Positions 16,175 to 64,000 of a DNA stretch of 64,000 nucleotides are shown here, piece by piece (positions within the stretch are counted from its first letter, which is position 1; every line of letters begins with the position of its first letter). The position numbers and the translations under genes were made by a program. Where the stretch lies: the IMG/VR virus record IMGVR_UViG_3300050821_013430, positions 408,750 to 472,749 of that record; one strand, written 5' to 3'. Under the pieces are notes generated by a model. That model did not search any database and had not been told where the DNA came from. It saw only the letters and a list, made by a program, of their open reading frames with translations.

Positions 16175-16249
16175 ATGGTGTCCTTTGTTATTGACATGGT
16201 AAATCCAAGAGAATAAGAAGTCAAGAGGATAAAATGACATTGGGAAGAG

Positions 16250-17155
16250 ATGCTGAAAACTGGAATCATTACCGCCCCACCCGCTATGGTGAGAGACATC
16301 AGCGACTTCGTGGTAGGAGCTTATGCTACACGGATCCTGGAAAACTTTGAGGAGAAGAGATTCCCACGGAACAAAGAAAGTATGGCGATACGAACCGTGC
16401 TGGAAGCGTTGGCCGAACGAAGCGGCAAGAAAATGATCATCCACCAGATAGACTTCGCCTACTACTTTGCGAAATTGAATTTTGATGATTGGGATGGGCC
16501 GGTGGGACCTGGGGAGAAGATAAAAGAAGTGCTAGGAGAGCACGGAGTAGTAGGAGTAAAGTGCTATGAAGTCTTCTACCCTACAATGGACAAACATCCA
16601 CGACCGGGAGCTAATGCTCAATGGAGCTATAACTTCCAAATCACCACCTATGCAGAATTGCCAATGGCTCAGAATCTGCAAGACTTTCGTCAATTGACCT
16701 TGGATTTGCAAGGGAAACAGAATGAGCTGAAGGTAACGGTGGCCCATGAACTCATTCATATGGTCCAGTATATCATTCAGATAATGCGAGGATTGAAAGA
16801 GATAGGAGGACTACCTGCTGAGAAAGTCAGGCATTCGGCCCCTCCCTTGGTTGATCCGAGCATCCCTTATCACTTACGGGATGAAGAGTTTTACACCAGT
16901 TTGGCGGATACCATTGAAACCTTTATGGAGCATGTTCGGAATGTGCCGGTGGAATACCGGGAAATAGCACTGCGGAGCTTTTTGAACCTACCATTCGCGG
17001 CGAGCAGAGATGCTCGGAAGAATTTGGTTGTTAGCACTTTCTTCGAGAAGATGCATAAGGATGATCCGAAAAGATGGGCGGAGTATGCCAAGAAGTTTGT
17101 GAAGCATTTGAGTCAGCATCCGGAAATCATGGGAATGGAAAGCGCTGCGGAATAA
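16250..17155 (+). CDS. HExxH metallopeptidase-like protein
   Basis: TVAHELIHMVQ with downstream EEF. Confidence 0.65.
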   Translation: MLKTGIITAPPAMVRDISDFVVGAYATRILENFEEKRFPRNKESMAIRTVLEALAERSGKKMIIHQIDFAYYFAKLNFDDWDGPVGPGEKIKEVLGEHGVVGVKCYEVFYPTMDKHPRPGANAQWSYNFQITTYAELPMAQNLQDFRQLTLDLQGKQNELKVTVAHELIHMVQYIIQIMRGLKEIGGLPAEKVRHSAPPLVDPSIPYHLRDEEFYTSLADTIETFMEHVRNVPVEYREIALRSFLNLPFAASRDARKNLVVSTFFEKMHKDDPKRWAEYAKKFVKHLSQHPEIMGMESAAE

Positions 17156-17238
17156 AGCATTACGCGCTGCATAAAAAGGCATCTCTTGTTTGAGGTCCTT
17201 AGAAACATCCCTCAAAATCTTCCAAAAAGGCTGCACAT

Positions 17239-17961
17239 ATGAATTTGTTGAAGGCTCTGTTGATTGCTTGTTTGTCGATTTTCAGTTTCGGTTGTGGTAC
17301 CAGTATGCACGTCAGTGGGCAAGTTAGTGTGCCAAACTTGATGAGTAAGACGGTAGTACTAACTACTTATGTGATGAATGAAGATGATGGTACCGCCTCA
17401 GTAAAACCATATTGCAGCGGAGTCTTTATTTCGGAACGGGAGATTTTGACAGCAAGACATTGCGCGGCAGCGATAGCAGAAAAGGATAACGTGGAAGAGT
17501 TGGATAAGCTTCCAATGCACTACACCTTAGCCTCCGAAGCGGTAGGCGTTGGCAAGGAGCCTGCTGCGATGCATTTGGCCTTCGTGGTCAAAGAAGATAA
17601 GGACAAAGATTTGGCACTACTGCTATTGCCGAAACAAGGGATTCCGGCTCATGGAATTGCGCGAATCGCGGACGAGATGCCCGCACTGGGCGAAGCGGTG
17701 GAAGTTATTGGAACGCCCACGGGAAATTATTTTACTTTGAGCCACGGCTATGTTGCGGCAGTCAGAGAAGACTATCATGATCGAAAAGGTACCTTTTTGC
17801 AAGTGAGTGGTAATGGCATCTACTTCGGCAACAGTGGCGGACCTGCTTACAATGAAAAAGGTGAGCTGGTCGGGATTGCAGACTTTTTGAGTATGAGATT
17901 GCCCGGCAGCGTTTTCTTTGTGGCAGTACCGGAACTGAAAGAGTTTATCGAAGAAGTCTAA
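17239..17961 (+). CDS. trypsin-like serine protease, putative lipoprotein
   Basis: LTARHC, DLALL and GNSGGP triad motifs; lipobox SFGC. Confidence 0.9.
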   Translation: MNLLKALLIACLSIFSFGCGTSMHVSGQVSVPNLMSKTVVLTTYVMNEDDGTASVKPYCSGVFISEREILTARHCAAAIAEKDNVEELDKLPMHYTLASEAVGVGKEPAAMHLAFVVKEDKDKDLALLLLPKQGIPAHGIARIADEMPALGEAVEVIGTPTGNYFTLSHGYVAAVREDYHDRKGTFLQVSGNGIYFGNSGGPAYNEKGELVGIADFLSMRLPGSVFFVAVPELKEFIEEV

Positions 17962-17977
17962 CGACTGCTTGTAAGCC

Positions 17978-19233: not shown

Positions 19234-19245
19234 GATCTTTTGGAC

Positions 19246-20490
19246 AAGAAAGTTATTCTGCTGCTAGCATTGTTACGACAGAAATTTGATATCCATTTGA
19301 TATATCGAATTATTGCCCTTGATCTAGGCATGATCCATCATTCTCATATATGCAGCGAACAGTTTCCGTCCCAGTCAATGTCCCAACAGGCTTTCTTGAT
19401 TACTTGAAGACCTGCTCGGTCATCTTCAATAGGCATATCGATTGGGCCTTCGAGAACTATACCTACAACAAGATCAAGGCCCACCAAGCCCTCTACTACC
19501 CTATTCGGGCAGAGTTCCCAGAGATACCTTCCTCGGTCTTGCAGGCTATCCGAGATACTGCTGTGGAGGCTGTAAAAGCCATCGACTTCAAGTTCAAGCC
19601 CACCAAGAAGCCCCATTCAGCAGTTAGATACAATGCTCGAACCATATCTCTTCGTGGCAATTTGCTCTCGTTCTCTTGGTCGGGCGATAGGATCAAGCAG
19701 TTAATCAAACTGCCTACTTTCTTCACCAATCGCTATAAGGACTGGAAGTTCCAATCAGCCACCATCGGCTATGACAAGCGGAAAGCCCAAGTCAGAGCCA
19801 ACCTTACTTTTACTTACCCCACTCCTCCTATCGTTCAGACTGACAACTCTGATCGAATAGTTGGGGCAGATCGAGGCTTGCACAACATCATCTCGCTGTC
19901 GGATGGTACTCTGTTCAATGCCTCTCGTGTTCGAGCCCAGAAACGCAAGTTCCTGTATGTAAAACGACAGCTCCAAGCAAAAGGCACTCGATCATCAAAG
20001 CGTCTCCTCAAAAAGAGATCAGGTCGAGAAATGCGGTTCAGCTCGGATGTCAATCATTGTCTATCCAAGAAGTTGGTCAATCTTCCGTATGATGTGTTCG
20101 TCCTCGAAAACCTTGCGGGTATCCGTAAACGAAACAAGGGTCGAAAACTCAACGGCTGGCTGTCTAACTGGACATTCTTTCAGTTAGAGCAGTTCATCGG
20201 GTACAAGACAGAAGCACTTGGCAAGCAAGTAGTCAAGGTGGATGCCCGCTATACCAGTCAGAAATGCTCAGACTGTGGGAATACAGACAAAGCAAGTAGG
20301 AAGGGCTCTCGATACTTATGCGTTGAATGTGGGCATGCGGAGCATGCCGATATCAACGCCGCTAAGAATATCAAGGCCAACTACACTCTCTCCTTGGCTG
20401 CAAAGAACAAGGAGCAGGCTCTCGTCAATGAGCCAAATGCCTCGGTCGCAAGATCAGAGGCAAGTTATTAGTTTTCTGATAACGCTTGAC
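19246..20490 (+). mobile_element. IS200/IS605-family (IS1341-like, tnpB only) element; left end approximate
   Basis: tnpB followed by hairpin GTTATTAG-TTTT-CTGATAAC and TTGAC at 20490; no tnpA in window. Confidence 0.6.
19350..20471 (+). CDS. tnpB: RNA-guided endonuclease TnpB
   Basis: RuvC-I GADRG, RuvC-II VLENL, Zn finger CSDC/CVEC, RuvC-III HADINAAKNI. Confidence 0.95.
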   Translation: MQRTVSVPVNVPTGFLDYLKTCSVIFNRHIDWAFENYTYNKIKAHQALYYPIRAEFPEIPSSVLQAIRDTAVEAVKAIDFKFKPTKKPHSAVRYNARTISLRGNLLSFSWSGDRIKQLIKLPTFFTNRYKDWKFQSATIGYDKRKAQVRANLTFTYPTPPIVQTDNSDRIVGADRGLHNIISLSDGTLFNASRVRAQKRKFLYVKRQLQAKGTRSSKRLLKKRSGREMRFSSDVNHCLSKKLVNLPYDVFVLENLAGIRKRNKGRKLNGWLSNWTFFQLEQFIGYKTEALGKQVVKVDARYTSQKCSDCGNTDKASRKGSRYLCVECGHAEHADINAAKNIKANYTLSLAAKNKEQALVNEPNASVARSEASY

Positions 20491-20517
20491 ACACCAAAAT
20501 GCGGAATAAGGCAGGGG

Positions 20518-21162: not shown

Positions 21163-21202
21163 CTATCCCAGTCTAAATGCCGGGAGAAGAGATGTCAATG
21201 CC

Positions 21203-21679
21203 TTAGCCTAATTGATCGACTACTTGCTTGATTAGGCCGTGCTCATTCTGCCAATTTTGCACATCTTCGGGAGTATGTTCCTGAGGGGTATGAAGCATTT
21301 TTTCGAGCCAATTCATTCTGCCCTTGAAAGCCGGAGAATTTGCATACCAAACGCCCATCTCATCGAGAGTGGGTTTTTGACCGCTCCTAATTTTATTGGA
21401 GAGGGTTTGGAAGAAGGAAAAAAGTGCCCTGCCTGTAAGATGTTGCTGGGGAACTGGGACCGTGGTAGGGGTGGCAGGCTTTGGCGCAGGAATACTTGGC
21501 GCTGCTTTAGGGGCTTCTGGCACCTGTACATTCGAGGGATCGAACTGTACATACTGGCCAGGGCCGGTCATTTGCTTCAATTCCTGAGAATATCTCTTGA
21601 GATAGCTCTCGGGGGTTCCGAATCGAGCCAATTTCTCGAATAGTTCAATTTTCTTCTTCAGATCGTCAAAGTTTTGCAT
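21203..21679 (-). CDS. hypothetical protein
   Basis: ORF preceded by ATA-N5-ACAT motif. Confidence 0.65.
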   Translation of the reverse strand: MQNFDDLKKKIELFEKLARFGTPESYLKRYSQELKQMTGPGQYVQFDPSNVQVPEAPKAAPSIPAPKPATPTTVPVPQQHLTGRALFSFFQTLSNKIRSGQKPTLDEMGVWYANSPAFKGRMNWLEKMLHTPQEHTPEDVQNWQNEHGLIKQVVDQLG

Positions 21680-21714: not shown

Positions 21715-22662
21715 TTAGTCGCCTTCGGTGCCTTGGTCAATGGAATTGTCCTCTGCTTCCAATTCACTTACGGTCAGGTCATCTTCATCAATATCTTCCG
21801 CAAGACCCCCAAACATATCGTCTCCAATTTGATGAACGTCATGATCTTCATCGTCGTCGTCATGATGATGGTGGTGGTGATGATGGTGCTCGGATTCTTC
21901 AGAATTATCAACATCAGTATCAGTATCAGTATCAACTTCATCATCCTCGTCGGGAGTGGCTTCCACTTCTTCTAGAAGATTGGGGCCGTGATGTCGTCGG
22001 TGTTCGTCTCCCTCAAATTCAACCTCGCCCCTAAACTTACCCTCGGCCTCGAAGTCGTCATCATCCCCAAACATATCAGCATCCCCATGATCATGCTCCT
22101 CGAATTCTTCTTCTATGGTATGACATCCATGATGATGCTCCCGAACCTCAAATCTACCGTATTTATCCTTGTCATCAACATCCAAAATGTATTCATCATT
22201 AGGATTATCTCTATCACGAGGAGGATCATCTAGATCTTGATGGTGGTAATGGGCCCGATCCGTTAGCTCATCGCTAATGGTTGGAGGGGGACGATGACGA
22301 TGCTCGAAATGGATCCTATCTCCCGCAATCAATCCCTGGAGATACATCTTGTCGATAGAGGTGGTGAAACGAGTAGGCCCTACTTTATTATGGAGAATAT
22401 AGGCCAAACCGGCTTTCAGGAATAAAACGATATCAGCCAGGTGTCGGTTAGTACAATCTGAAAGGTCCCTCAATACCAAAACTCGAAGATGATTGAGATG
22501 GATATTCAGAGGATAGTTAGGATCGGCAACGACTCGGGCATCAAACTCTGCGGCAGTAATAATCTCGGTAAGATAGAGTTGTCGGGTAAGAACATCTTGG
22601 ATCTGTTGTACAACATCTGTGTTGGTAAAAATGATAGCGGGAGGAAAGCAATGATGGCGCAT
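21715..22662 (-). CDS. protein with long His/Asp/Glu-rich tail (His9 run)
   Basis: SEHHHHHHHHHDDDDEDH. Confidence 0.75.
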   Translation of the reverse strand: MRHHCFPPAIIFTNTDVVQQIQDVLTRQLYLTEIITAAEFDARVVADPNYPLNIHLNHLRVLVLRDLSDCTNRHLADIVLFLKAGLAYILHNKVGPTRFTTSIDKMYLQGLIAGDRIHFEHRHRPPPTISDELTDRAHYHHQDLDDPPRDRDNPNDEYILDVDDKDKYGRFEVREHHHGCHTIEEEFEEHDHGDADMFGDDDDFEAEGKFRGEVEFEGDEHRRHHGPNLLEEVEATPDEDDEVDTDTDTDVDNSEESEHHHHHHHHHDDDDEDHDVHQIGDDMFGGLAEDIDEDDLTVSELEAEDNSIDQGTEGD

Positions 22663-23036
22663 TATTTCCTCGCCGCGAGTCGATAAAACTCTTGGGCCAT
22701 GGCTACCACGTTAGTTCCGGCAGAAGATTGACCCTCAGTAGAATGCTTGATCTTTTCCTGCATAAGAAGGTCATCAACCTCCATTTTGACGACCAACATC
22801 ATTTCGGAAAGATCGCTGTTGCCCTTGACTCCGTAGCTGATAGCCATATCCTTAGCGTGGTCGAGAGATTGTTCTAATTCCTGAGCATTAGCATATTCTG
22901 GGCGTTCTAAAAACATCGAAAGCCGATTAATAACCCTATCGAGACGTGGATCATGAGCGCTGAGCTGGTACAAGGTTTCTATGATCCGTTTCAATACAGG
23001 CAGGATGACCTTAGATTTGAGCAAATTCACCAACAT
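22662..23036 (-). CDS. hypothetical protein
   Basis: Start reassigned to ATG 23036 after the ATAATTTCGTAT motif. Confidence 0.6.
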   Translation of the reverse strand: MLVNLLKSKVILPVLKRIIETLYQLSAHDPRLDRVINRLSMFLERPEYANAQELEQSLDHAKDMAISYGVKGNSDLSEMMLVVKMEVDDLLMQEKIKHSTEGQSSAGTNVVAMAQEFYRLAARK

Positions 23037-23661: not shown

Positions 23662-24236
23662 TATTCGATAAGACCCAGCTACCCTCTTGCGATGGGCTGA
23701 CAGAAAAACCCAATGTTTGGATACAAACCTATACCGGGAAGAAATTCTATCCCCTTAACCCAAAGATTGAAGATATTTCAATCGAAGATGCTGCCCATTC
23801 ACTTTCGATGTTGTGCAGATTTACCGGGCACTCCCGCGTTTTTTATAGTGTGGCGGATCATTCCATCAGGGTTTCTTATCTGTGTAAACCAGAAAATCAA
23901 TTATACGGACTATTGCATGATTTAAGTGAGTACATTCTCAACGACGTAAGCTCTCCGTTAAAACGATCCGGACACTTCGATGATTACCGAAAGATCGAAA
24001 AGAATTTGCAAACGCTGATTTGTCGAAAGTTTGGACTCGCAGAAGAAGAGCCGCTAGAAGTCAAAGTGGCTGATTTGACTATGTTGGCGACCGAAGCACG
24101 CGATCTACTTCCCGGCGGACCCCACCCGGACTTTCGTTTGGAATATGTGCCCCTGCCAACAGTTATTATTCCCCTGTCGCCAGCAGAGGCGGAACGACAA
24201 TTTTTGGCTCGATATAGAGAATTGACGGGAGTATAG
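23658..24236 (+). CDS. HD-domain phosphohydrolase (YfdR/YfbR-like)
   Basis: CRFTGH...YSVADHS...LLHD; start ATG 23658. Confidence 0.85.
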   Translation: MIFDKTQLPSCDGLTEKPNVWIQTYTGKKFYPLNPKIEDISIEDAAHSLSMLCRFTGHSRVFYSVADHSIRVSYLCKPENQLYGLLHDLSEYILNDVSSPLKRSGHFDDYRKIEKNLQTLICRKFGLAEEEPLEVKVADLTMLATEARDLLPGGPHPDFRLEYVPLPTVIIPLSPAEAERQFLARYRELTGV

Positions 24237-27221: not shown

Positions 27222-27437
27222 ATGGTTAGCAGCGAGTTAGAGTTCGATGGTGTTGTAATCAGTGATTGTAAGGGAAAATTTACTATCCAAGTGAGTGATA
27301 AATACATTGTGTTATGTACATTAAGCGGAAAAATAAGACAAAATGGTGTTCGTATCCTACCACATGATCGTGTAAAAATATCCGTCTCGGAGTATAATCC
27401 TCAAATGGGAAGAATAATTTATAGATATAAGGACTAA
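27222..27437 (+). CDS. infA: translation initiation factor IF-1
   Basis: LCTLSGKIRQNGVRILPHDRVKI..S.Y...GRIIYR; AAGGAG SD. Confidence 0.92.
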   Translation: MVSSELEFDGVVISDCKGKFTIQVSDKYIVLCTLSGKIRQNGVRILPHDRVKISVSEYNPQMGRIIYRYKD

Positions 27438-27826
27438 ACTTCCTTCTCTAAGGATTGAAGAAAAGTCATCAGCCTCTGAAAAAATTGCTCCCTACCCGAA
27501 GCAGTAGGACCCGAGGGTGTCTGGTCGATGGATTTAAATACGGATGTTCCCTCGTGCCATCCGGTTGGCCCCCACCCTTTTCGCTCACCTTTGAATCCTG
27601 GAGCGTGATAGTGCTGCTCTTTCCTGGCAATATACTTTTGCCCATCTACTTCAAATTCTTTCATCGCGCCATAAGGCTCATTATGAAGTTCTTTCCATAG
27701 TCTCATCGCATTTTGCTGCACTCCCTCGGTATTTTCCGAGCCGGAAAGGGGTCGATATCCTGCAGGAGGAACTCCTGGTTGGTAGCCTGGTAAATGTGGA
27801 ACGGATGGGGGCGGAGGGGTTGTCAT
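27434..27826 (-). CDS. hypothetical protein
   Basis: ORF preceded by ATATTCCAGCAT. Confidence 0.65.
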   Translation of the reverse strand: MTTPPPPSVPHLPGYQPGVPPAGYRPLSGSENTEGVQQNAMRLWKELHNEPYGAMKEFEVDGQKYIARKEQHYHAPGFKGERKGWGPTGWHEGTSVFKSIDQTPSGPTASGREQFFQRLMTFLQSLEKEV

Positions 27827-27869
27827 TGGGGACGAGAGTGGATATATTGATGCTGGAATATTGAGGTGA

Positions 27870-28889
27870 ATGATAATGATTACAAATGGTTTATGCTTCG
27901 ACGATGTGCTACTTATTCCCCGTTATTCGGAAATCAAATCTCGTGCTGATGTCAGCACTATAGTCAAGTTATGCAAAGGATTTAGTTTCAGTTCTCCGGT
28001 AGTGCCAAGTAATATGCGCACCATTACTGGGCTGGAAATGGCTTACCAGATCTACGCTCAGGAAGGCCTTGGCATTGTTCATCGGTTTATGCCAATCACC
28101 GACCAACTCAGAATAGCCAGGGAACTGAGTCACGCTCTCAAATTCATCGGCTTCTCGGTTGGGGTCAAGGAAGATGATTATGAATGCGTGGATCGGTTTG
28201 TCGGAGCCGGAGTCCAAATCCTATGTGTTGATGTGGCCCACGGTCATTCACTAATGTGCGGCGAGATTGTCAAGTACATCGCCAGTAAATATCCTGATGT
28301 CTTATTGATTGCTGGCAACGTTGCCACTGGAGATGGGGCGGGCTTCTTGTGGCGAGCGGGGGCTGACATAGTAAAGGCTGGAATTGGAAATGGTTCAATT
28401 TGTACCACTCGTATCGCTACCGGCAATGGCGTACCACTGCTCTCTACCCTAATGGAAATCAAAAGTGAGAAAGGCTTCTTCGAGAAAGAGTTGGATCGCT
28501 CACTCTACATTATGGCCGATGGTGGGGCTAAAAACTCTGGTGATTTGGTCAAAGGACTTTGTTTTGCGGATATGGTGATGAGCGGCAATCTATTCGCCGG
28601 ATGCGAAGAAACTCCTGGTGATACCATTGAACTTGGTGGCAAACTCTACAAGAAGTACGAAGGCAGTTCTACCCACAAAACTAACCACATCGAAGGGGTA
28701 AAGTCTGTTATGCCTCTTCGACCTAAGGTTGGAGAAGTGATGGGCACGCTCTTAGAAGGAATTAGAAGCGGATGTTCCTATCAAAGCGTTGATAGTGTAA
28801 AGAAACTGCAAGACAATCCTAAGTTTGTTCGCCAAACCGGATTAGGTTTCAGGGAAAGCGGGGCACACGACGTGCAGGTGATTGACTGA
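27870..28889 (+). CDS. IMP dehydrogenase / GMP reductase family, no CBS domains
   Basis: [36 protein letters not shown]. Confidence 0.9.
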
Positions 28890-29746
28890 TGATGCAAAAC
28901 AAAGAAGAACATAATTATCTCGATATGCTTCGGCATATTTTAGAGCAGGGAGAAAAACGCCAAGATCGGACTGGTATTGGAACGCTAAGTGTCTTCGGAA
29001 CACAACTTCGTTTCTCGTTGGAGGACAATGTTGTACCAATGCTGACTACCAAGAAGATGTTTGCTCGTGGCGTTATTGAGGAATTACTCTTCTTCCTTCG
29101 CGGTGATACGGATACCAAAAAGTTGGAAGCCAAAGGAGTCAATATTTGGAAAGGCAATACTAGTCGGGAATTTCAGGAAAAACAAGGCTTGGTTTGGCTA
29201 AGAGAAGGGGAAATGGGAAAGGGCTACGGATGGGAATGGAGACGCTTCGGTACTGAGTTGCATTCAGTAGATCAGGTGAAAGAAGTTTTGATCTCGCTGA
29301 AAGAAAATCCATATGGCCGAAGACACATCATTACTGCCTGGAATCCTTGTGATTTGCGAGCAACAGTTCTGCCCCCTTGCCATACATTCTATCAGTTCTA
29401 TGTTAGCGATGGCAAATTGAGTTGCCAATTCTATATGCGCAGCGTTGATACTTTCCTCGGCTTACCATTCAATATCCTAAGTTATGCTTGCCTGACTCGA
29501 ATCATAGCTCAAACCGTTGGACTAGGAACAAAAGAATTGGTATTCACCGGAGGCGATACTCACCTCTATTTCAATCATATTGAACAGGTGAAAGAGCAAT
29601 TAGGGCGAGAGCCATATGAGTTCCCAAAGATGACGATTGGTAGGGCCACATCTTCGATAGAAGACATCGAAGCCTTGCAGTTCGAGGATTTTGAGATTAC
29701 AGGATACAAGAGTCATCCGACAATCAAGGCGGAGATGGCAATATAG
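28889..29746 (+). CDS. thyA: thymidylate synthase
   Basis: DRTGIGT, LPPCH, YMRSVD..LGLPFN, GDTHLY. Confidence 0.97.
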   Translation: MMQNKEEHNYLDMLRHILEQGEKRQDRTGIGTLSVFGTQLRFSLEDNVVPMLTTKKMFARGVIEELLFFLRGDTDTKKLEAKGVNIWKGNTSREFQEKQGLVWLREGEMGKGYGWEWRRFGTELHSVDQVKEVLISLKENPYGRRHIITAWNPCDLRATVLPPCHTFYQFYVSDGKLSCQFYMRSVDTFLGLPFNILSYACLTRIIAQTVGLGTKELVFTGGDTHLYFNHIEQVKEQLGREPYEFPKMTIGRATSSIEDIEALQFEDFEITGYKSHPTIKAEMAI

Positions 29747-29754: not shown

Positions 29755-30276
29755 ATGAACAATATCAAGATGATTGCTGCAGTAAGTAGCAACGGAGTTA
29801 TTGGCAAGAACAACTCCCTTCCTTTTCATTACACCGCCGATATGAAACACTTTCGGAAAATGACCGCCAACTCAACGGTAATTATGGGTAAGAATACTTT
29901 TCAGAGTATGGGAAGCAAGCCGCTCCCTGGTCGTCGTAATATCATCGTTTCAACCACACTTGATCTGGTAAAAGGGATTGAAATTTTTCCCACCACACCA
30001 ACTGCTATCTATGCCGCAAACTATCCTTACGGAGAATCTTTGGTAGCACCTTGCTACACTTATGCAGAAGATAAATGGTTCATCGGAGGCGCCTCCATTT
30101 ATGCTGACGGAATGTCAGTGGCAGATGAAATCTATCTCACCATCACACCTGATATTATTGAAGGGAAAGATTTGGTTCGATTTCCCTGGATCAATCCTCA
30201 GATATTCTCCGTCGCAAGCACCGAAAAGTTTCCCGATGATGATCGATTAACGCTGGTGAGATATGTTCGTCAATAG
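29755..30276 (+). CDS. folA: dihydrofolate reductase
   Basis: GVIG..NSLP, DMKHFR, IMGKNT, PLPGRRN, IGGASIY. Confidence 0.95.
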   Translation: MNNIKMIAAVSSNGVIGKNNSLPFHYTADMKHFRKMTANSTVIMGKNTFQSMGSKPLPGRRNIIVSTTLDLVKGIEIFPTTPTAIYAANYPYGESLVAPCYTYAEDKWFIGGASIYADGMSVADEIYLTITPDIIEGKDLVRFPWINPQIFSVASTEKFPDDDRLTLVRYVRQ

Positions 30277-30975
30277 TTGATAGGCTAAGCAAGCCTTGTT
30301 GAGAATGCGTGCCTTGGTTGCCGCAGTGCGCTTGGCCAAGTGCTCCTGCATACTCCATTGTTCCGCCTTCTCCTTTGCGCCAGGAAGCCACATCTTGGCG
30401 TCCTTACCAGGAGTAGTATAGGCTGGGACTGGGATGAAACGAGCCGGATCAACCCACCCACCATTGACCATCACACCGAAGTGTAGATGAGGCCAGGTAA
30501 CATTAGCGTCGCCCGTGTTGCCCACGGTGCCAATAACTGTATTGGTATCCACCGGCTGTCCCTTCTGGACTGCCACGGAACCTAAATGAGCGTAATATGC
30601 TTTGATGCCACCGGGGTGTTGGGTGAAAACCACGTTACCACCCTTTGGGTCTGTTCCAACGGAGCTAACAACACCAGAACCAAATCCATAGACCAATGAG
30701 CCACCTGCCACACGCAAATCCGCCCCAATATGACCATGAGGGTGCCTAGGATCAGTGGCGGTAGTCGAGAAACCGCCGCTGGACTCATAGGAACCGTGGA
30801 TAGGGCTCTGGAACCTTGTTTGCTGCTCCGTCTTTGAGCCAGGAACGCCTGGTGAAGGGGTCTCTGGGGCAGAGGGTAGGGCATCGTCCAAAGCCTTTGT
30901 AGCACCTCCTGGGCCGAAGAGTTGTTTCAATTCTGAGAATAGGCTTTCTACTTCCTTGAAATCGATATCATCCAT
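30247..30975 (-). CDS. M23 family metalloendopeptidase
   Basis: HIGAD, YYAHL, GTVGNTG, PHLHF. Confidence 0.9.
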   Translation of the reverse strand: MDDIDFKEVESLFSELKQLFGPGGATKALDDALPSAPETPSPGVPGSKTEQQTRFQSPIHGSYESSGGFSTTATDPRHPHGHIGADLRVAGGSLVYGFGSGVVSSVGTDPKGGNVVFTQHPGGIKAYYAHLGSVAVQKGQPVDTNTVIGTVGNTGDANVTWPHLHFGVMVNGGWVDPARFIPVPAYTTPGKDAKMWLPGAKEKAEQWSMQEHLAKRTAATKARILNKACLAYQLLTNISHQR

Positions 30976-31528: not shown

Positions 31529-31568
31529 AATATTTGGCCTTTCTTATTTGGTTGCCATACTTCTTATA

Positions 31569-35672: not shown

Positions 35673-35787
35673 TTATGTCCTTGAAAAGATGAACTGTCTC
35701 TGCTATATCGGTAGTTATGAAAGAATTTGATGTCAACATGAAAATGTTGAGAGACGGTGATATAGAGAGGCGAAACAGGAGAAAACA

Positions 35788-36920: not shown

Positions 36921-36960
36921 CGAGCGTAGGGCCTGCTAAACTTTTGGCATACTCTATAGT

Positions 36961-41784: not shown

Positions 41785-41785
41785 A

Positions 41786-43996: not shown

Positions 43997-44012
43997 TTAT
44001 ATCTCCTTAATT

Positions 44013-46365: not shown

Positions 46366-46376
46366 TTCATTTCTCC

Positions 46377-48083: not shown

Positions 48084-48114
48084 TTAGGTCTCCTGAAATG
48101 ATGCAACAATATTG

Positions 48115-51100: not shown

Positions 51101-51300
51101 TGATCAAATTTGACCGTTGTGCTGGTGCCGAAAGTTAGGTTAGAGGCAACCTTATACACACCAGGTGGAATGAAAATAGTTCCAGTATTAGCAATCTTGC
51201 TAATGGCACTATTGAACGCAGCGGTATCGTCGGTCGCACCATCGCCTTGGGCGTGAAATGGGCTCTCTTTTATGTTGATGAAGTTGAATTCGATACTCAT
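48115..51300 (-). CDS. tailspike with beta-helix, carbohydrate-binding-like region and fibre C-terminus
   Basis: Two GD...DDTAA motifs; GTYKQGDVV...GWIC; SGDLNL...W...E...N..TGK. Confidence 0.75.
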   Translation of the reverse strand: MSIEFNFINIKESPFHAQGDGATDDTAAFNSAISKIANTGTIFIPPGVYKVASNLTFGTSTTVKFDQGAILKPSSGAVTITLASIIAGIAQQIFDISAGGKVTFAYPASTPSEKLSVKWWGAKGDNSTDDTAAIQAALDAGTNIIDTAPQPPTIGAIWPHSTVFLPHGSYVVSSAGTNIACLEMTDAITFLGENSILNCASPNQHILRSGNYFDYIEGITFLNGKSAVVLNGPSHHYGGSLGTVEAGGPNSITRCSFWHNAGPSIFLDTTIENRSSAATMFVRDCHFETSCAWHAGFDGAQVSDCYMIPSQSTLDDANAVLVYDDDGYILPFMVSYDNLILQNCVMAPQFGDQTVATTHSAWLGGLGAFTADSCRFGGESGAPILRIKANNFSYYGQSLAAITDPGSYQCLIKFDSSVLSSCAGLYWMEIYDYFPAKIDVRMLHQGIPSGLPYGNVLMESNGIWIDSVSCPKTSYLYRQRSTIVINIDNFIDLYPDFRFTTSNNVLHTFPFGEDVTGELKRYRLREFKGTEANIGVSQNYWSTGNIDYTTLTGLGSTNVAGGSTDTTTGYNIGGILCTATPGLYIAASPTAFLTTSMPAGEYTFSMAIKATANGQVGLSFYDPIVAANNFIIDTLDYSGSTPSDGYAIWQRISTSFYYDGYVNRQIAFSFYNLRSGDEFWFGLFALQKGRKVKDWTYPGNPTAQDDIVSTYYATAIPVSGTYKQGDVVLNTTPTLGSPYGWICTVGGSPGTFQLISNAGGTPGGAAGGDLSGTYPNPLVAAISGSTPINITPATLQWTTGTVNPTLTQVSTSSGSGQQMLITAQSATGAGHSGGNLILGAGNSGLSTVGSVYIQTGGTTQFQFSPTALTYTPAGGSSTLIASATSFLSQPSSYNQLLALDNYSDANVTHFRTLNTVTTYGQISASLFQALVSSFTQLSAPDVFFDATTVHIRDNMVSPNASSVMLNAGGATTFQPVTDNTGSIGVNGFRWSLIRGVTITSGDLNLTDEARGADWKFREQQTFVLAINQMTGKRMKLSMQELTAEDEAELVVNDPIYARSQK

Positions 51301-51308
51301 TGGTTATC

Positions 51309-53147
51309 CTATCCGCTCACCATCTGTTCGGTCGTAAGGTAAATAGTAAGCGAACCACCCGTTAGATCGGCAGGCGTCCCGACTGTCATAGCGAGTTGCA
51401 TAAACCCACCACTAAATGATGCCATTCCACCGCCCTGAACAAGTGTTGCTCGCGCAAGCTCTACTCCCAAATCCCCATCAACAAGTCCCCAGGTTGCCGT
51501 ACTAGTTGCCAAAAATGCTTGGAGGTATGAATTCGCTCCAACAGAGCTGATACCTACTGCAAATTGAGGAGCAGACCCAGCCGATACCGTAAATGCCGTA
51601 GTAACCTTCGCCACAACACTATGCACTTTTGTACCAGCCTGAAACTGACAGAGAGAGACTGTTCCAGCATTGGCCGTTATTGTTGCTGCACTGATGGTGA
51701 ACTCTTGGGTGGATACTCGTAATTCGCCTTTCCGTCGCACCACGACACCTGATGAAGTACTTGACACACCGGTCGTCGGTACAATTCCTCCAACAGGTAG
51801 CGGGAACCCAAACAGTGGCCGCAGTAATTCACCGCTTCCTCCAATATAATCACCGCCCATATCACCGAACGAAAAGACTTCAAGCCGATTGACATCTGCG
51901 TAATCACTCTTGGTAAGCGCATTATGTGAACCATCAAAGGCATCGAGAGCGCTAACAGTAAATCGGTAACAGTTGTTTAGTGATAGAAGCCCACTTCCAG
52001 GACCGATATCTGGAATGGTATCGCTAACTCCAATCGATGCTGCATTGCTTCCACCGCCGCTGCCATCAATGATATTGCCAATCAATGATAGTTTGCCACC
52101 GTACTGAATGATCATTGCATTGCCCAAGATGATGACTGCTTGTCCGCCATAATGAACAGTTGCCCCGCTAACAAGATTGGTGGTGCTACAAGTCAAGTTG
52201 TTGTTTTGTACTAGGGCATGTCCAACAGCGTGGGCGACACCAATATCCGCCAAGAACTGCGTGTCGAACTCTGGGAAACTCGAATTAGAGCTCTGACCGC
52301 TCTCGACCGCACAATCCGTTACGGTGAGGTTTTGCCCGCCTGTTAGAATACAAACGCCCGGCAAAAGCGTTACTGGAGGAGTAAGTGATGCTGCGCCAAC
52401 ATGCATCGAACCGAACCCGCACCACCGAACAACGGTATTGTCACCGCCGCTATTGAAAATACCCACTTCCATACTGACGAACTGGCATCCCTCAATCAGA
52501 TAGTCTTTTGCGTTGGCGCCGCTGACATTGTTGAACCCATAGCCGGTGGTAAAGCCCGGATTGTCAGAGCATCCTTGGAAGAAACAATCGCGCACGGCGA
52601 GTGTATCCGTTTGATATTGGGGCCCGCTCGTTTCACCTACCAGCAACAATGAGGAGCCGTGATTGGTCGATGCAATCGTATCGCAACATGCAGTGAAAGT
52701 ACAGCGTTCGATACGCACTCCGCTTGATCCAGCCCCACCAATCCCAGTAGCAGAATGTACCCAAAGGCCAGTTGTCGCAAGGAAGTTTCCGTCGAAGGTG
52801 ATATTGGAAATCCGTGAGTTAGTTAGACCACGGCACTCCATGATTGTACCACCAACAGAACCGTGCCATTGAAGCCACGCACCAGACGGTGTTAGACCAA
52901 TACCAGGCCCCACTATATCAATACCGGCACCACGACTGGCAACTAACAATAGCGTACTGGTGATCTTGTAGAAAGACGTAGCGGCCGGGATGAAAAGTGT
53001 AACCGCGTTGTTGTTAGCCAAAGTGCTAACTGCGGTAATAGCGGCCTGAATAGCGGCGGTATCATCCGTCACTCCGTCTCCCCTAGCGTTATATGGGAAG
53101 TCCTGGACATTGATGGTGACTATCGGATGTGTGAGGTTTATGGTCAT
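51309..53147 (-). CDS. tailspike-like beta-helix protein, paralog of 41786..43534
   Basis: YNARGDGVTDDTAAIQAA; shared C-terminal GE.R...GL..GDLG..L....VQG. Confidence 0.75.
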   Translation of the reverse strand: MTINLTHPIVTINVQDFPYNARGDGVTDDTAAIQAAITAVSTLANNNAVTLFIPAATSFYKITSTLLLVASRGAGIDIVGPGIGLTPSGAWLQWHGSVGGTIMECRGLTNSRISNITFDGNFLATTGLWVHSATGIGGAGSSGVRIERCTFTACCDTIASTNHGSSLLLVGETSGPQYQTDTLAVRDCFFQGCSDNPGFTTGYGFNNVSGANAKDYLIEGCQFVSMEVGIFNSGGDNTVVRWCGFGSMHVGAASLTPPVTLLPGVCILTGGQNLTVTDCAVESGQSSNSSFPEFDTQFLADIGVAHAVGHALVQNNNLTCSTTNLVSGATVHYGGQAVIILGNAMIIQYGGKLSLIGNIIDGSGGGSNAASIGVSDTIPDIGPGSGLLSLNNCYRFTVSALDAFDGSHNALTKSDYADVNRLEVFSFGDMGGDYIGGSGELLRPLFGFPLPVGGIVPTTGVSSTSSGVVVRRKGELRVSTQEFTISAATITANAGTVSLCQFQAGTKVHSVVAKVTTAFTVSAGSAPQFAVGISSVGANSYLQAFLATSTATWGLVDGDLGVELARATLVQGGGMASFSGGFMQLAMTVGTPADLTGGSLTIYLTTEQMVSG

Positions 53148-54034
53148 TACACGATACTCCAAAATCCTGAACTGCCATACACCAATTGAACACCTTCATA
53201 GTTGACATTCATTATGTAGTTGGCGTTCCCATCGATGGTATTTCCGTTGCCAGCAATGGTGATGAAATGGGCTTGCGCCGAACTTTTTTGATCCTTGATG
53301 AAGAGGGTTTGTCCAACGGTTGGGCTGGCGGGCAGCGTGATGGTGATGTTCGAGGAAAGAGTGCCCACCATAATTATCCGATCAGAGCTCACTACTGGAT
53401 AGTTAGTAGTAACTGGAGTGATGGTTTCGATATTGTCGCCAATCAGTGGGACATAGGCTCCTCCATTTTGGGAGACCAAGAACTGATTTTGAGTAGCATC
53501 GTAGTAGATAATGCCCTGACTAGGGTCAGATACAGCAGGAGAACCAGAGATACTATTGACAATAAACTTGCCATTTAGAGTGAAGAGTCCGGTCGTTTCA
53601 GAAGTGGAAAGCATCGGCCCGGAAGTGATTTGACCGGTAGTGGTGATATTCTGATTGTAGAAGTTGGTACCGGGAACATAGGAAATGCCCTCAAAAATCA
53701 AAGTTTGACCCAAAGTTGGTGCGGTAGTAGAGATAGGAACGCCCTGCAAACCAACAACCAAAGGAGCGTTATTGGTGCCTCCTAAATCTTGACCAATTCT
53801 AACTCCACCGCTGGGACCTCCACCTGAATTGATTTCGGCCTGCATTGCGTCTAAACGGGCTCTGACGGTGGAATAGGTACCGGATGGCTTGACCCCTAGC
53901 TCGGTCTCAACGGCAATTATAGCGGCTTTTAGGCGGTTGAGTACCTCAGCATTATACAGGGTAATATTATCGAAAACAGTTGGCAGACTAATACTGTTGT
54001 CGATTTGTGCCGGATATAGGATGTTGATGACCAT
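53147..54034 (-). CDS. tail-fibre-like protein
   Basis: AIIAVETELG; DLGGT...P.V.GLQG; ITLPASPT.G....KD. Confidence 0.65.
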   Translation of the reverse strand: MVINILYPAQIDNSISLPTVFDNITLYNAEVLNRLKAAIIAVETELGVKPSGTYSTVRARLDAMQAEINSGGGPSGGVRIGQDLGGTNNAPLVVGLQGVPISTTAPTLGQTLIFEGISYVPGTNFYNQNITTTGQITSGPMLSTSETTGLFTLNGKFIVNSISGSPAVSDPSQGIIYYDATQNQFLVSQNGGAYVPLIGDNIETITPVTTNYPVVSSDRIIMVGTLSSNITITLPASPTVGQTLFIKDQKSSAQAHFITIAGNGNTIDGNANYIMNVNYEGVQLVYGSSGFWSIV

Positions 54035-61521: not shown

Positions 61522-61564
61522 AGATAACTCCTTGCTGCCTATCTATAACCGACACTCTCAAAGT

Positions 61565-62854
61565 TTAGAGCAAATCAGCAGCCGCAGTGGCCAATTTGCT
61601 GCGCTCACCCTTAGTTAGAATAATATGTCCAGCCAATTCTGAGTTCTTAAACTTTTCAATAACATATACCAACCCATTGCTGGTGGCATCCAGATCATTA
61701 CGGTCGAGCTGTTCAATATCGCCAGTTAAAATAATTTTGCTGCCCTCTCCGGCACGGGTAAGGATGGTTTTGATTTCTTGCTTGTCCAAGTTTTGAGCCT
61801 CGTCAATCAAAATCAATGCATTAGGAATTGATCTGCCACGAATATAGGTAAGAGCTTCGAGTTGAATTTTTCCCTTCTTGGCATACATATCATAATTGGA
61901 CTGCCATCTATCACCATTTCTCATGGTAAAAAGTGTCTCAAAATTGTCCATAATGGCGGAGAACCAGGGGATCAGTTTTTCTTCAATCGTTCCGGGAACA
62001 TAGCCAATATCATTTCCCATCGGTTGAATAGGACGGTAAATGATCAGTTTTTGATAGATATTTTGGTTGATTACCAAGTCTAGAGCGGTGGCCAATGATA
62101 TTAAGGTTTTACCCCCTCCCGCCTTGCCAACCAGAGTTACTAATGGAACAGAGGGATCAGAAATCAAATCGGCAGCCAATATTTGTTCTTGATTACGAGG
62201 ATTCAATTTCCAAGGATAATATTTTTTGACCAGTTTGATTTTGTCGAAGGACATTTTGCGACCAGCACAAATCACTTTACCATCTTCATCTTTGAAAAGG
62301 ATGCACTGATTTGGAAAAACTTCTCCTTCCAGATCGGTAGGATCAAGATATCCAACACTCAACAATTCATTACCCAAATTGGTATCTTGAATTTCTTGCA
62401 TCCCGGAATACAAATCAGTAATTGATCTATTTTTCTCCTCTAAACTATCTGTTTCTATACCTAACGATTTGGCTCTAACTCGTAAGGATACATCATTGGA
62501 TACAAGTACTACTTCATTTATAGGATTTTGACTTAGACCATAAGCACAAGAAAGAATAAGATTGTCCCCATAAAGAGGATTAGAGCCCTTCAATGGATAG
62601 TCATTAGTATCCACGGACACCAGGGCATTTTTTTCAGTTAGTACACCAACGCTGATGTCTCCGGTTTCGGATAATTTATCCAACATTCTAATGGTTACAC
62701 GAGCATTTTTACCGACTTCGCCGGGCTGTTTCTTCAATTTGTCGAGTTCATCTAATACTGCAACATAAATAACAACTGAGCAGTCCGAATAATTTTCTAT
62801 GGAAAGTGGGTCAAATATAAGAACCGAGGTGTCTAAAACATAAACTCGTGTCAT
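61565..62854 (-). CDS. phoH: PIN-PhoH family protein
   Basis: PIN VLDTSV..ELD..D; GKAGGGKT, YIRGRSI, DEAQN, GD.EQ.D. Confidence 0.92.
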   Translation of the reverse strand: MTRVYVLDTSVLIFDPLSIENYSDCSVVIYVAVLDELDKLKKQPGEVGKNARVTIRMLDKLSETGDISVGVLTEKNALVSVDTNDYPLKGSNPLYGDNLILSCAYGLSQNPINEVVLVSNDVSLRVRAKSLGIETDSLEEKNRSITDLYSGMQEIQDTNLGNELLSVGYLDPTDLEGEVFPNQCILFKDEDGKVICAGRKMSFDKIKLVKKYYPWKLNPRNQEQILAADLISDPSVPLVTLVGKAGGGKTLISLATALDLVINQNIYQKLIIYRPIQPMGNDIGYVPGTIEEKLIPWFSAIMDNFETLFTMRNGDRWQSNYDMYAKKGKIQLEALTYIRGRSIPNALILIDEAQNLDKQEIKTILTRAGEGSKIILTGDIEQLDRNDLDATSNGLVYVIEKFKNSELAGHIILTKGERSKLATAAADLL

Positions 62855-63225
62855 TCGTTGTTGATTTCCTCAAATATTGTCCAATTTTTTACATGCATCT
62901 CCAAAAATAATTTGCGGGTGGGATCTAATTCTGATAAATCTTGTCGTAAGACATATTTTGGTTTTTCCCAAACAGCCACTAAATCTTTATCAGCATAAAT
63001 TTTGATCTCTCCGTCAGTATTGTCAATGACTTGCACACCATATTTGGATAATAGTCCACGCAATTTGATTTTACTATCGACAGTTAGATTGCCATCTTCA
63101 TCCCAAATATCTTCCAATGGTAATCCCATTGTTTCTAATATGAGGCGAACAAAACGAGTTTTCTCCTCGTCTTCTACTTGACGAGTGTTTTCATTTGAAT
63201 TTAGAAGTATAGTCGCTTCCATCAC
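62851..63225 (-). CDS. hypothetical protein
   Basis: ORF preceded by ATAATTCCGTAT. Confidence 0.65.
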   Translation of the reverse strand: MMEATILLNSNENTRQVEDEEKTRFVRLILETMGLPLEDIWDEDGNLTVDSKIKLRGLLSKYGVQVIDNTDGEIKIYADKDLVAVWEKPKYVLRQDLSELDPTRKLFLEMHVKNWTIFEEINNE

Positions 63226-63244
63226 TAATTAGTAATATACGGAA

Positions 63245-64000
63245 TTATTGACAACGGCTATAACCACAGGCAGTACAAAGCAAACAGCCCTCTTGATACA
63301 CAATCGAACCTTCTTTTTGGCAGGAAGAGCAAATTCTATCTGAGGCTTGAGTACCATCCTTGATATAGGATTTGAGAACACGGGCAATTACTTTTGAGAA
63401 AGAAGTCATATCACTATGTTTATCTTTTTGTAATTGTTCTACAATGTATTGAACTGGGGTGCCGTGGCGAAGAGCAAGAGAAATGGTTCGAGTTAGAGTC
63501 CCGAAATTGGGATTCTCGAAAACGCTTACAATATCTTTGATGATCATTTGATCATCAGCCTCTCCAACTACCAAATTATAGGTAGCAACGCCATTTACTT
63601 TTCCATTCTTGACAATTTTACCGTTCTTGTATTTATTGGGGATATCTACATACTTAGAAAGACCGCCGAACACTTCGTAAGGCTTATTGCCTAACATTCC
63701 TACAAAGATAGTCCAAGCCTCTCCTTGTACTTTGACTTTCTTGATCTCACAGAGTAGTTCTAGGAGTCGTTTGGGGGCGTGGGCTTGTTGAATTTCAACG
63801 GGTCGATCGCCCTCCTTGGGAGGAGTGTTACTAATAAGCACACCATCCTTACTTCCTTCTACATAGACGGTAACGCCTTTCAGACCTTGCTTCCAAGCGT
63901 TGATGTAGATGTTGCCAACCACATCAGAAGTGGTACCTCGTGGTAAATTGATGGTAGAACTAATTGAGTGATCAATATATTGTTGTTCGGTGCTTTGAAT
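63245..64000 (-). CDS. nrdJ: ribonucleotide reductase C-terminus, probably class II (NrdJ) with TSCPD-like tail; 5' truncated
   Basis: QQYIDHSISSTINLP, GLKGVTVY..GS, R.ISLALRHG, CxxC...EGC..C..CGYS.C. Confidence 0.85.
   Translation of the reverse strand: MQSTEQQYIDHSISSTINLPRGTTSDVVGNIYINAWKQGLKGVTVYVEGSKDGVLISNTPPKEGDRPVEIQQAHAPKRLLELLCEIKKVKVQGEAWTIFVGMLGNKPYEVFGGLSKYVDIPNKYKNGKIVKNGKVNGVATYNLVVGEADDQMIIKDIVSVFENPNFGTLTRTISLALRHGTPVQYIVEQLQKDKHSDMTSFSKVIARVLKSYIKDGTQASDRICSSCQKEGSIVYQEGCLLCTACGYSRCQ

What the first reader, a model, noticed from the sequence alone, without database searches (positions are those of the whole stretch)
16229..63248. Candidate phage late promoter ATA-N5-GCAT
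Seen about 6-25 nt upstream of start codons: 16229(+) ATAAAATGACAT, 21704(-) ATATTCTGACAT, 23043(-) ATAATTTCGTAT, 27850(-) ATATTCCAGCAT, 30983(-) ATACTTTTGCAT, 36158(+) GTATTCCCGCAT, 48101(-) ATATTGTTGCAT, 54047(-) ATAATTCAGCAT, 63237(-) ATAATTCCGTAT; looser at 36939(+) and 58132(-). Most head fibre operons or isolated genes. Known: T4 late promoters are a single short box read by a phage sigma factor. Inference: a compact promoter for a phage-encoded sigma factor or polymerase, often giving very short leaders.
Basis: partly seen in the sequence, partly recalled or inferred. Interest (0 to 1): 0.6.

Follow-up and report, generated by a model that had tools for sequence, protein, structure and literature searches.

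The report
Conserved compact promoter box in megaphage
A 12-base box (ATA-N5-G[C/T]AT) lies just upstream of tail, fibre, lysis and many unknown genes in a 473-kb uncultivated soil phage and its distant relatives; it is most likely a promoter without a -35 element, read by host RNA polymerase carrying the phage's own sigma factor, and it often sits so close to the start codon that the mRNA has no leader.

Summary
Nine fit a refined model (ATA-N5-G[C/T]AT, often preceded by CA); the two "looser" sites do not.

The raw count in the window is at chance. The signal is position and orientation. Genome-wide, 26 of 90 exact matches end within 40 nt upstream of a co-oriented start codon, against about 2 for scrambled words. 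An unbiased scan of ~197,000 dyads ranks this box first. In the 1-260 kb stretch, 25 of the 26 strong sites (PWM score of at least 14 bits) point the same way as the genes.

The window is the end of a 472,749-bp virus record. Relatives of 350-450 kb (sheath 50-56% identical) keep the box at orthologous genes (odds ratio 15, p 2e-6; replicated at p 0.002), including upstream of the sheath gene and of a clade-specific two-domain sigma-70-family gene. No phage RNA polymerase was found.

The box is 4-7 times denser in the virion module than elsewhere. A 6-nt gap to the ATG recurs in three genomes, which suggests leaderless mRNAs. A second box (GATATA) marks a different, also conserved, gene set.

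Start sites, timing and the sigma-box pairing are inferred, because no RNA data exist. This is a new member of a known kind: phage-sigma promoters such as T4 late and phiEco32 gp36.

The parts
16229..16240 (+). Box ATAAAATGACAT, 9 nt before the ATG of 16250-17155 (301 aa, no family match)
   Evidence: 12.6 bits
17171..17182 (+).
   Evidence: 17.0 bits
19302..19313 (-).
   Evidence: 14.8 bits
21704..21715 (-). Box ATATTCTGACAT, 24 nt before 21203-21679 (158 aa, unknown)
   Evidence: 12.6 bits
23043..23054 (-). Box ATAATTTCGTAT, 6 nt before the in-frame ATG at 23036 (gene 22662-23036, 124 aa); predicted leaderless class
   Evidence: 13.2 bits
27850..27861 (-). Box ATATTCCAGCAT, 23 nt before 27434-27826 (130 aa); back to back with GATATA (27841-27846, +), which heads the dehydrogenase / thymidylate synthase operon 27870-29746
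   Evidence: 11.1 bits
30983..30994 (-). Box ATACTTTTGCAT, 7 nt before 30247-30975 (242 aa, M23-type peptidase / endolysin-like)
   Evidence: 15.2 bits
36158..36169 (+). Weak variant GTATTCCCGCAT, 7 nt before the GTG of 36177-36920 (virion-structural-like), followed by two tailspike-like genes 36961-41784 and 41786-43534
   Evidence: 7.6 bits, uncertain
48101..48112 (-). Box ATATTGTTGCAT, 17 nt before 46377-48083 (568 aa) with an AGGAGA ribosome site; heads a four-gene operon that includes the tail-fibre-assembly-like gene 45580-46392; the G003 orthologue also has a box
   Evidence: 9.4 bits
54047..54058 (-). Box ATAATTCAGCAT, 12 nt before 53147-54034 (tail-fibre-like C-terminus), heading the tailspike-like genes 51309-53162 and 48115-51300; the G002 orthologue has ATACTTTAGTAT upstream
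   Evidence: 16.8 bits
63237..63248 (-). Box ATAATTCCGTAT, 11 nt (GTG) or 14 nt (ATG) before 62851-63225 (124 aa), followed by PIN-PhoH 61565-62854
   Evidence: 16.1 bits
36939..36950 (+).
   Evidence: 4.9 bits
58132..58143 (-).
   Evidence: 2.5 bits

Best explanation
The box ATA-N5-G(C/T)AT, often preceded by CA, is the core of a phage-specific promoter class with no conserved -35 element. Host RNA polymerase reads it when it carries the phage's own two-domain sigma-70-family factor. That factor is a 209-aa protein encoded at G000 2112-2741(-); because the record is circularly permuted, the gene lies about 3 kb beyond the right end of the window.

The class drives mainly virion, tail-fibre and lysis genes, free-standing homing-endonuclease genes and the sigma gene itself (positive feedback). 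It is therefore probably a late class.

The geometry that fits best puts the last T of the box at -7 and the start site 7 nt further on. Genes with the modal 6-nt gap would then be transcribed as leaderless mRNAs starting at the A of the AUG. Genes with longer gaps would have ordinary leaders with Shine-Dalgarno sites.

Shown here: non-random position and orientation, conservation at orthologous genes, the presence and conservation of the sigma, and the absence of a recognisable phage RNA polymerase. Inferred: promoter activity, the start site, the timing, and which factor reads the box.
For: Position and orientation: 26 of 90 exact matches lie just upstream of co-oriented starts vs ~2 for controls. 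The box is the top-ranked dyad genome-wide. There are 39 vs 7.4 PWM hits of at least 14 bits, and 25 vs 1 by strand.

Conservation at ~42-45% protein identity: G000-G002 orthologue table [[10,10],[11,169]], OR 15, p 1.7e-6, with 17 scrambled words giving 0-1 co-occurrences. G000-G003: 9/25 vs 12/128, p 0.0016. The box is kept upstream of the sheath gene in about 30 relatives.

Sigma: Pfam Sigma70_r2 27.3 bits and r4 22.2 bits; TIGR02937 61.8 bits; aligns to SigA/SigB/RpoS regions 2-3.0 and 4. The model shows sigma2 + linker + sigma4, and the listed Foldseek matches are almost all sigma chains. There is one homologue in each of 5 large relatives, and the region 2.3-3.0 segment is nearly invariant. 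A box lies 40-51 nt upstream of the sigma gene in 7 of 8 genomes.

No phage RNAP: PF00562 and PF00940 gave no match; PF00623 gave only a spurious 12.8-bit hit; no beta-prime catalytic motif in six frames; the giant ORFs are structural or replication proteins.

Function: 27 of 104 virion-module genes carry the box vs 10 of 175 replication-module genes (p 3e-6). Downstream genes include sheath, fibres, fibre assembly, tailspikes and M23 peptidase.

Geometry: the 6-nt gap is the mode in three genomes; T precedes the start codon in 10 of 13; purine peaks at the 7th nt after the box in G000 (72%) and G002 (73%); SD-like sites occur in 64% of long-gap vs 14% of short-gap genes.

Precedent: phiEco32 gp36 (PMC12276001); phage 7-11 (PMC4331800); jumbo phages without an RNAP encode sigmas (PMC7824862).
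Against: There is no transcript evidence: only two soil DNA runs hold the sequence.

The sigma keeps a sigma4 domain, yet no -35 element is conserved. Under the preferred geometry the -11 position is G or C, not the A that sigma-70-type factors normally flip out.

The genome has one sigma but at least two box classes, so the sigma could read GATATA instead.

The box also precedes non-structural genes (homing endonucleases, a PhoH operon, small genes among nucleotide-metabolism operons), while the large terminase gene carries GATATA. The class is therefore not cleanly 'late'.

The best-scoring G000 site (before the 1930-aa gene) is not conserved as a full box in relatives, which have gTTATATAt there. 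Enrichment in AT-rich G002 is modest, and G003 shows no purine peak at the predicted +1. The major capsid gene was not identified.
Confidence: 0.62

Rival explanations
1. The box is a promoter, but it is read by host RNA polymerase with a host sigma, or with another unidentified phage factor. The phage sigma serves a different promoter class, for example GATATA.
For: One sigma but two conserved box classes. The AT-rich half ATAwwT resembles a -10 hexamer. GATATA(T) is the top dyad in G003 and is also strong in G002. The host is unknown.
Against: The element conserved upstream of the sigma gene in relatives is this box; no GATATA occurs there in any of the 7 relatives. Sigma-70-type -35/-10 promoter matches are at chance in the fibre region. 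A host-type promoter would not be expected to concentrate in the virion module.
Confidence: 0.17
2. The box is the binding site of a phage-encoded late activator or repressor placed next to a weak core promoter. It would be an operator-like site, not the element contacted by sigma.
For: Late activators with sites close to -10 regions are known in other phages (Mu C, RinA; listed). The genome encodes many HTH proteins, for example window 4785-5885.
Against: The box is asymmetric and strictly co-oriented with the gene (25 vs 1). With a 6-nt gap to the ATG there is no room for a separate -10 element downstream of it. No additional conserved element lies nearby.
Confidence: 0.08
3. The box acts at the RNA level, as a 5'-UTR processing, stability or translation-initiation signal rather than a DNA promoter.
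For: In the 6-7-nt class the GCAT half occupies the place of a Shine-Dalgarno site, and those genes lack one. The sheath leader just after the box is also conserved.
Against: Gaps range from 6 to about 68 nt, and long-gap genes have their own SD-like sites. The box heads operons and divergent gene pairs, where a promoter is needed. It has no complementarity-type or hairpin feature.
Confidence: 0.07
4. The pattern is a compositional or chance by-product of AT-rich intergenic DNA.
For: The raw count in the window is at chance. In AT-rich G002 several scrambled words are also common upstream.
Against: Scrambled words of the same composition give ~2 vs 26 upstream hits. The box is rank 1 of ~197,000 dyads. 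Orthologue co-occurrence was replicated in two genome pairs with null controls. The same 6-nt spacing mode appears in three genomes.
Confidence: 0.02

Closest known systems
phiEco32 gp36-dependent middle/late promoters (and the predicted promoters of phage 7-11)
   Same: A phage-encoded two-domain sigma (sigma2-like NTD, sigma4-like CTD) redirects host RNAP to promoters defined by one compact box near -10 with no -35 consensus (PMC12276001). In phage 7-11 the phage-sigma promoters also precede the sigma gene itself and the structural genes (PMC4331800).
   Different: The box sequence is unrelated (AATGTA / TAATGTATA vs ATA-N5-G[C/T]AT). No gp79-like cofactor has been identified here. The sigma has no detectable match in any cultured phage. 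The genomes are 350-470 kb myovirus-like phages, not a 77-kb podovirus.
T4 late promoters (TATAAATA; gp55 with gp33 and the gp45 clamp)
   Same: A single short AT-rich box close to the start site with no -35 element, read by host RNAP carrying a phage sigma. It serves virion genes and free-standing homing-endonuclease genes (own knowledge of T4; the group 2 jumbo-phage summary is in PMC7824862).
   Different: gp55 is a minimal sigma without region 4, whereas this protein has a sigma4 domain. The box is two-part and 12 nt long. gp33- or clamp-type co-activation was not examined.
AR9 / phiKZ non-virion RNAP late promoters (AACA-N6-TA/G; TATG)
   Same: A compact two-part box ending at or near the start site, found before roughly a hundred late genes of a giant phage (PMC5312081).
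   Different: Those boxes are read by phage multisubunit RNAPs. No beta or beta-prime homologue or catalytic motif is present here. AR9 leaders are 26-491 nt, whereas here many gaps are only 6-7 nt.
Leaderless transcription units of bacteria (for example mycobacteria) and phages
   Same: A -10-region element at a fixed short distance from an ATG that lacks a Shine-Dalgarno site. Leaderless transcripts are reported as common in mycobacteria (PMC4633059, title and abstract as listed), and phage transcripts are described as often leaderless (PMC5312081).
   Different: Here the leaderless state is only inferred from spacing, and it applies to roughly a quarter of the box-headed genes (14 of 58 at gaps of 6-7 nt).

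Membership tests
Sigma-70 family (the candidate reader protein, G000 2112-2741, -) | Sigma2 domain (regions 2.1-2.4) | tested here: met
   PF04542 27.3 bits (cut-off 24); TIGR02937 61.8 bits (cut-off 42.9); aligns to regions 2-3.0 of SigB/SigA/RpoS; helical sigma2 in the model
Sigma-70 family (the candidate reader protein, G000 2112-2741, -) | Sigma4 domain (helix-turn-helix that binds the beta flap and -35 DNA) | tested here: met
   PF04545 22.2 bits, just under the 24.1 cut-off, but residues 121-204 align to region 4 of SigB/SigA1 and the model has a four-helix C-terminal domain at 136-206
Sigma-70 family (the candidate reader protein, G000 2112-2741, -) | Binds core RNAP and confers promoter-specific initiation | not testable with these tools
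   Needs biochemistry; the host is unknown
Phage-sigma-dependent compact promoter (T4 late / phiEco32 type) | Short conserved box at a fixed place just upstream of transcription starts | tested here: inconclusive
   The position relative to start codons is strongly non-random and conserved, but no transcript 5' ends are available
Phage-sigma-dependent compact promoter (T4 late / phiEco32 type) | No conserved -35 element | tested here: met
   Column profile -40..-1 is flat; the best variable-position word, ATTC, occurs 16/58 vs 4.7 expected
Phage-sigma-dependent compact promoter (T4 late / phiEco32 type) | Phage encodes the cognate sigma and lacks its own RNAP | tested here: met
   One sigma gene; no RNAP; the sigma is present in 5 of 5 large relatives
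Phage-sigma-dependent compact promoter (T4 late / phiEco32 type) | Serves late (virion, lysis) genes | tested here: inconclusive
   Enriched 4-7-fold in the virion module and lies before sheath, fibre and lysin genes, but also before non-structural genes; there are no timing data
T4 late promoter proper | TATAAATA box read by a gp55-type sigma that lacks region 4 | tested here: not met
   The box is ATA-N5-G[C/T]AT, and the sigma has a sigma4 domain
phiKZ / AR9 nvRNAP late promoter | Phage-encoded multisubunit RNAP | tested here: not met
   No PF00562 match; only a spurious 12.8-bit PF00623 hit; no xADFDGD motif in any ORF of 150 aa or more
T7-type single-subunit RNAP promoter | Phage single-subunit RNAP (PF00940) | tested here: inconclusive
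   No match in G000, but the control genomes could not ring for this family; none of the large ORFs scanned showed it
Canonical sigma-70 promoter | TTGACA-N17-TATAAT | tested here: not met
   No -35 element; consensus-type matches are at chance in the fibre region (38 vs 37.7)

The most novel reading that the evidence does not exclude
The box is a new promoter grammar: a two-part element spanning -18 to -7, with no counterpart of the canonical -11 adenine. A minimal two-domain phage sigma reads it without a -35 contact. It launches leaderless late mRNAs for about a quarter of its genes. The system is conserved across a widely distributed, entirely uncultivated clade of 350-470-kb phages, alongside a second (GATATA) class that divides the genome into separate regulons.
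Probability: 0.3. Interest if true: 0.6.

Novelty: new member of a known kind. Interest (0 to 1): 0.45.

Why it matters
None of the huge phages in this clade has been cultivated, so their gene-expression programme is unknown. A conserved box together with a candidate cognate sigma gives a sequence-only way to define a regulon of about 45-60 transcription units. It flags dozens of unannotated genes as probable virion or late genes. It corrects start codons where the longest-ORF call was wrong. It also predicts leaderless translation.

The sigma-box pair can be tested in vitro without the host. If it works, it would be an orthogonal transcription part. The result also shows that promoter classes in metagenomic megaphages can be recovered and cross-validated by orthologue footprinting alone.

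Tried and rejected
- Megablast of 24 kb of the window against cultured phages found no match. tblastn of the sheath matched only the C-terminal domain at ~30% identity (Tunturi_5, phage G and others). tblastn of the sigma found no match.
- Public runs: two soil DNA data sets and no RNA.
- A scan of bacterial genome assemblies with the sheath protein found no relative, so the host is unknown.
- PF00940 gave no match, but its controls were uninformative. The weak PF00623 hit at 285.6 kb is a 158-aa ORF without the catalytic motif and was rejected.
- Capsid families PF05065 and PF07068 gave no match. Pfam, PHROGs and the ESM Atlas gave nothing for most genes with a conserved box.
- No convincing -35 element was found at fixed or variable spacing.
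- In G002 the unbiased dyad scan is dominated by another element (CCCATC-N3-TAACGG) and by AT-rich words. The box is enriched there only in a directed test.
- The best G000 site (before the 1930-aa gene) is not conserved as a full box in relatives.
- A Markov-chain shuffle timed out and was replaced by local permutation.

Full report
WHAT THE WINDOW IS

The window is the last 64 kb (408,750-472,749) of a 472,749-bp IMG/VR virus record, rated complete by CheckV. The only public runs that hold it are soil metagenomes, and none is RNA. It has no near relative among cultured phages. IMG/VR does hold a large family of related contigs of up to ~447 kb whose tail sheath is 50-56% identical.

Two relatives were fetched whole: G002 (447,763 bp, 31% GC) and G003 (434,688 bp, 48% GC). 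They share 200 and 153 reciprocal best hits with this genome, at median 45% and 42% protein identity, in collinear order. Synteny shows that the record is circularly permuted: the right end of the window continues into the record's start.

Window 1-15.5 kb (56% GC) is the tail of a GC-rich block of short ORFs. From 16 kb onward the window holds nucleotide-metabolism operons, a TnpB, an M23 peptidase, four tailspike-like proteins, a collagen-like fibre and PIN-PhoH.

CHECK OF THE OBSERVATION

All 11 sites are present as written. The raw number of matches in the window is at chance: 8 vs 9.1 expected, and 33 vs 33.9 for the degenerate form. The signal lies in placement.

- Genome-wide, 26 of 90 exact matches end within 40 nt upstream of a co-oriented start codon. 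The 72 scrambled words of the same composition give a mean of 2.2 and a maximum of 6.
- A scan of every trimer-N0..11-tetramer dyad ranks TAA-N4-GCAT and ATA-N5-GCAT first and second (p 2e-18 and 1e-17).
- An iterated PWM gives 39 sites of at least 14 bits against 7.4 +/- 2.0 in local shuffles. Thirty of the 39 are upstream of starts.
- In the 1-260 kb stretch, where ~95% of genes are on the - strand, 25 strong sites are on - and 1 is on +.
- Several apparent exceptions are cases where the longest-ORF start was wrong and an in-frame ATG lies 6-8 nt after the box.

Nine reader sites score 7.6-16.8 bits. The two 'looser' ones score 4.9 and 2.5 and lack the N5 spacing.

CONSERVATION

Upstream of the sheath gene, about 30 relatives keep a box of the same architecture (ATATTAATACAT there, ATATACCCGCAT here), although the proteins are only ~53% identical.

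Across all orthologue pairs, a G000 gene with the box has it in G002 in 10 of 20 cases, against 11 of 180 for genes without it (odds ratio 15, p 1.7e-6). Seventeen scrambled words give 0-1 co-occurrences. The G000-G003 comparison replicates this: 9 of 25 vs 12 of 128, p 0.0016, with null controls.

The second half of the box drifts between genomes. It is GCAT here, mostly GTAT in G003 (G[CT]AT 20 of 87 upstream vs 3.5% background), and GCAT, ACAT or GTAT in G002.

There is one counter-example. The top-scoring G000 site, before the 1930-aa gene, is replaced in relatives by gTTATATAt.

WHO READS IT

The genome has exactly one sigma-70-family gene (G000 2112-2741, -), about 3 kb past the window's end.

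- It has sigma2 and sigma4 domains.
- The AlphaFold model (pLDDT 78.8) shows sigma2, a disordered linker and sigma4, with no sigma3. The listed Foldseek matches are almost all sigma chains of initiation complexes, though TM-scores are low (0.29-0.44), which I attribute to domain arrangement.
- Each of five large relatives has one homologue at 49-60% identity.
- The region 2.3-3.0 segment is almost invariant across eight homologues.
- A box lies 40-51 nt upstream of the sigma gene in 7 of 8 genomes. No GATATA occurs there in any of the seven relatives. This is the arrangement expected for a self-amplifying sigma, and it is the one predicted for phage 7-11 (PMC4331800).

No phage RNA polymerase was found by family scans, by scanning the giant ORFs, or by a six-frame search for the beta-prime catalytic motif. 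No conserved -35 element accompanies the box.

WHICH GENES

The box precedes the tail sheath, collagen-like fibres, fibre-assembly-like proteins, tailspike operons, an M23 peptidase, a protease-like gene, four free-standing HNH endonuclease genes, the sigma gene and many unknowns.

Per gene it is found before 27 of 104 genes in the tail/virion module, 10 of 175 in the replication module and 11 of 305 in the small-gene block (p 3e-6 and 3e-10).

A second box, GATATA(T), is also upstream-enriched in all three genomes. It precedes DnaB, a TubZ-like tubulin, RecA, the large terminase, glycosyltransferases, TnpB and the thymidylate synthase operon. It is conserved between G000 and G002 orthologues (p 0.005) but not significantly between G000 and G003 (p 0.15). 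It does not cross-associate with the first box (p 0.70 and 0.38), and only 3 genes carry both. The two boxes therefore mark distinct regulons.

GEOMETRY

The gap from box end to start codon has a mode at 6 nt in all three genomes: 13, 11 and 7 sites. In G000, 10 of those 13 have T immediately before the start codon.

Among sites with gaps of at least 12 nt, purine frequency peaks at exactly the 7th nt after the box in G000 (72%, p 0.005) and in G002 (73%, p 0.001), but not in G003. Short-gap genes lack SD-like sequences (3 of 22), while long-gap genes have them (23 of 36).

The simplest reading is that the last T of the box is at -7, and +1 is 7 nt further on. The 6-nt-gap genes would then be leaderless. 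The alternative is that ATAwwT is the -10 hexamer, the A of GCAT is +1, and the leader is 8 nt. It cannot be excluded without 5'-end data.

COMPARISON AND VERDICT

The system works like the promoters of phiEco32 gp36, which have a compact AATGTA box near -11.5 read by a two-domain sigma (PMC12276001), and like T4 late promoters. It resembles AR9's AACA-N6-TA/G only in form, because no phage RNAP is present (PMC5312081). Jumbo phages without an RNAP are known to carry sigma factors (PMC7824862).

It is not a member of the T4 late, phiKZ/AR9 or canonical sigma-70 promoter families, because defining features were tested and not met. I found no description of this box or this sigma in the papers searched.

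Promoter activity, timing and the sigma-box pairing remain inferences.

Noticed in passing
G000 genome-wide; window examples 19299-19304(+), 24211-24216(+), 27841-27846(+), 31565-31570(-), 35704-35709(-), 35759-35764(+), 43998-44003(-): A second compact upstream box, S-GATATA-D, with a modal 9-nt gap to the ATG. It precedes DnaB, a tubulin-like gene, RecA, the large terminase, TnpB and the thymidylate synthase operon. It is the top dyad in G003 and is conserved between G000 and G002 orthologues (p 0.005; G000-G003 p 0.15).
   Followed up: partly
G002 (L079-L081, L100-L101): 1-45 kb and 433-447 kb: The element CCCATC-N3-TAACGG occurs 79 times, all on one strand, about 15-25 nt before nearly every small gene in the end blocks of relative G002. 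It is absent from G000. It may be an early promoter or a processing signal.
   Followed up: partly
window 1-15500 (G000 240-425 kb): A GC-rich (50-56%) block of about 300 short ORFs inside an otherwise 37-45% GC phage genome. It has few orthologues in relatives, and either box is rare there. The composition shifts sharply at window ~15.5 kb. G002 and G003 are compositionally uniform.
   Followed up: partly
window 4785-5969: tRNA-Glu (5892-5969, -) lies immediately next to a 366-aa protein with resolvase/HTH_38-type helix-turn-helix matches (4785-5885, +).
   Followed up: partly
window 19350-20471 (+); G000 149200-150411 (-): Two TnpB / IS605 OrfB-type genes (Cas12f1-like TNB domain) in the phage genome, each behind a GATATA box.
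   Followed up: no
G000 ~2790-2925 (-), just beyond the window's right end: A ~44-aa acidic ORF directly upstream of the sigma gene, conserved in relatives. The sigma's own box lies between the two genes. It is a candidate sigma partner or anti-sigma.
   Followed up: no
L026-L070, just downstream of the sheath-gene box: The first ~11 nt after the box (TTTAATGATAC; TTTAGCGATGAC in G000) are conserved across about 30 relatives, which suggests a functional initial transcribed or leader sequence.
   Followed up: no
G000 11812-13173 (-): A Tubulin/FtsZ plus TubZ-like C-terminal domain protein (PhuZ-like) in a phage that has no recognisable phage RNAP.
   Followed up: no
window 63,9xx / G000 start; L032: The record is circularly permuted relative to G002, so the window's end abuts the record's start. 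A second IMG/VR record of 221 kb (L032) is 100% identical over the sheath protein match.
   Followed up: partly
window 36961-43534 and 48115-53162; G000 92195-99244: Four pectate-lyase-fold tailspike-like proteins sit in one 17-kb stretch of the window. Elsewhere in the genome there is a 2349-aa collagen-repeat protein with a weak JmjC-like hit.
   Followed up: no
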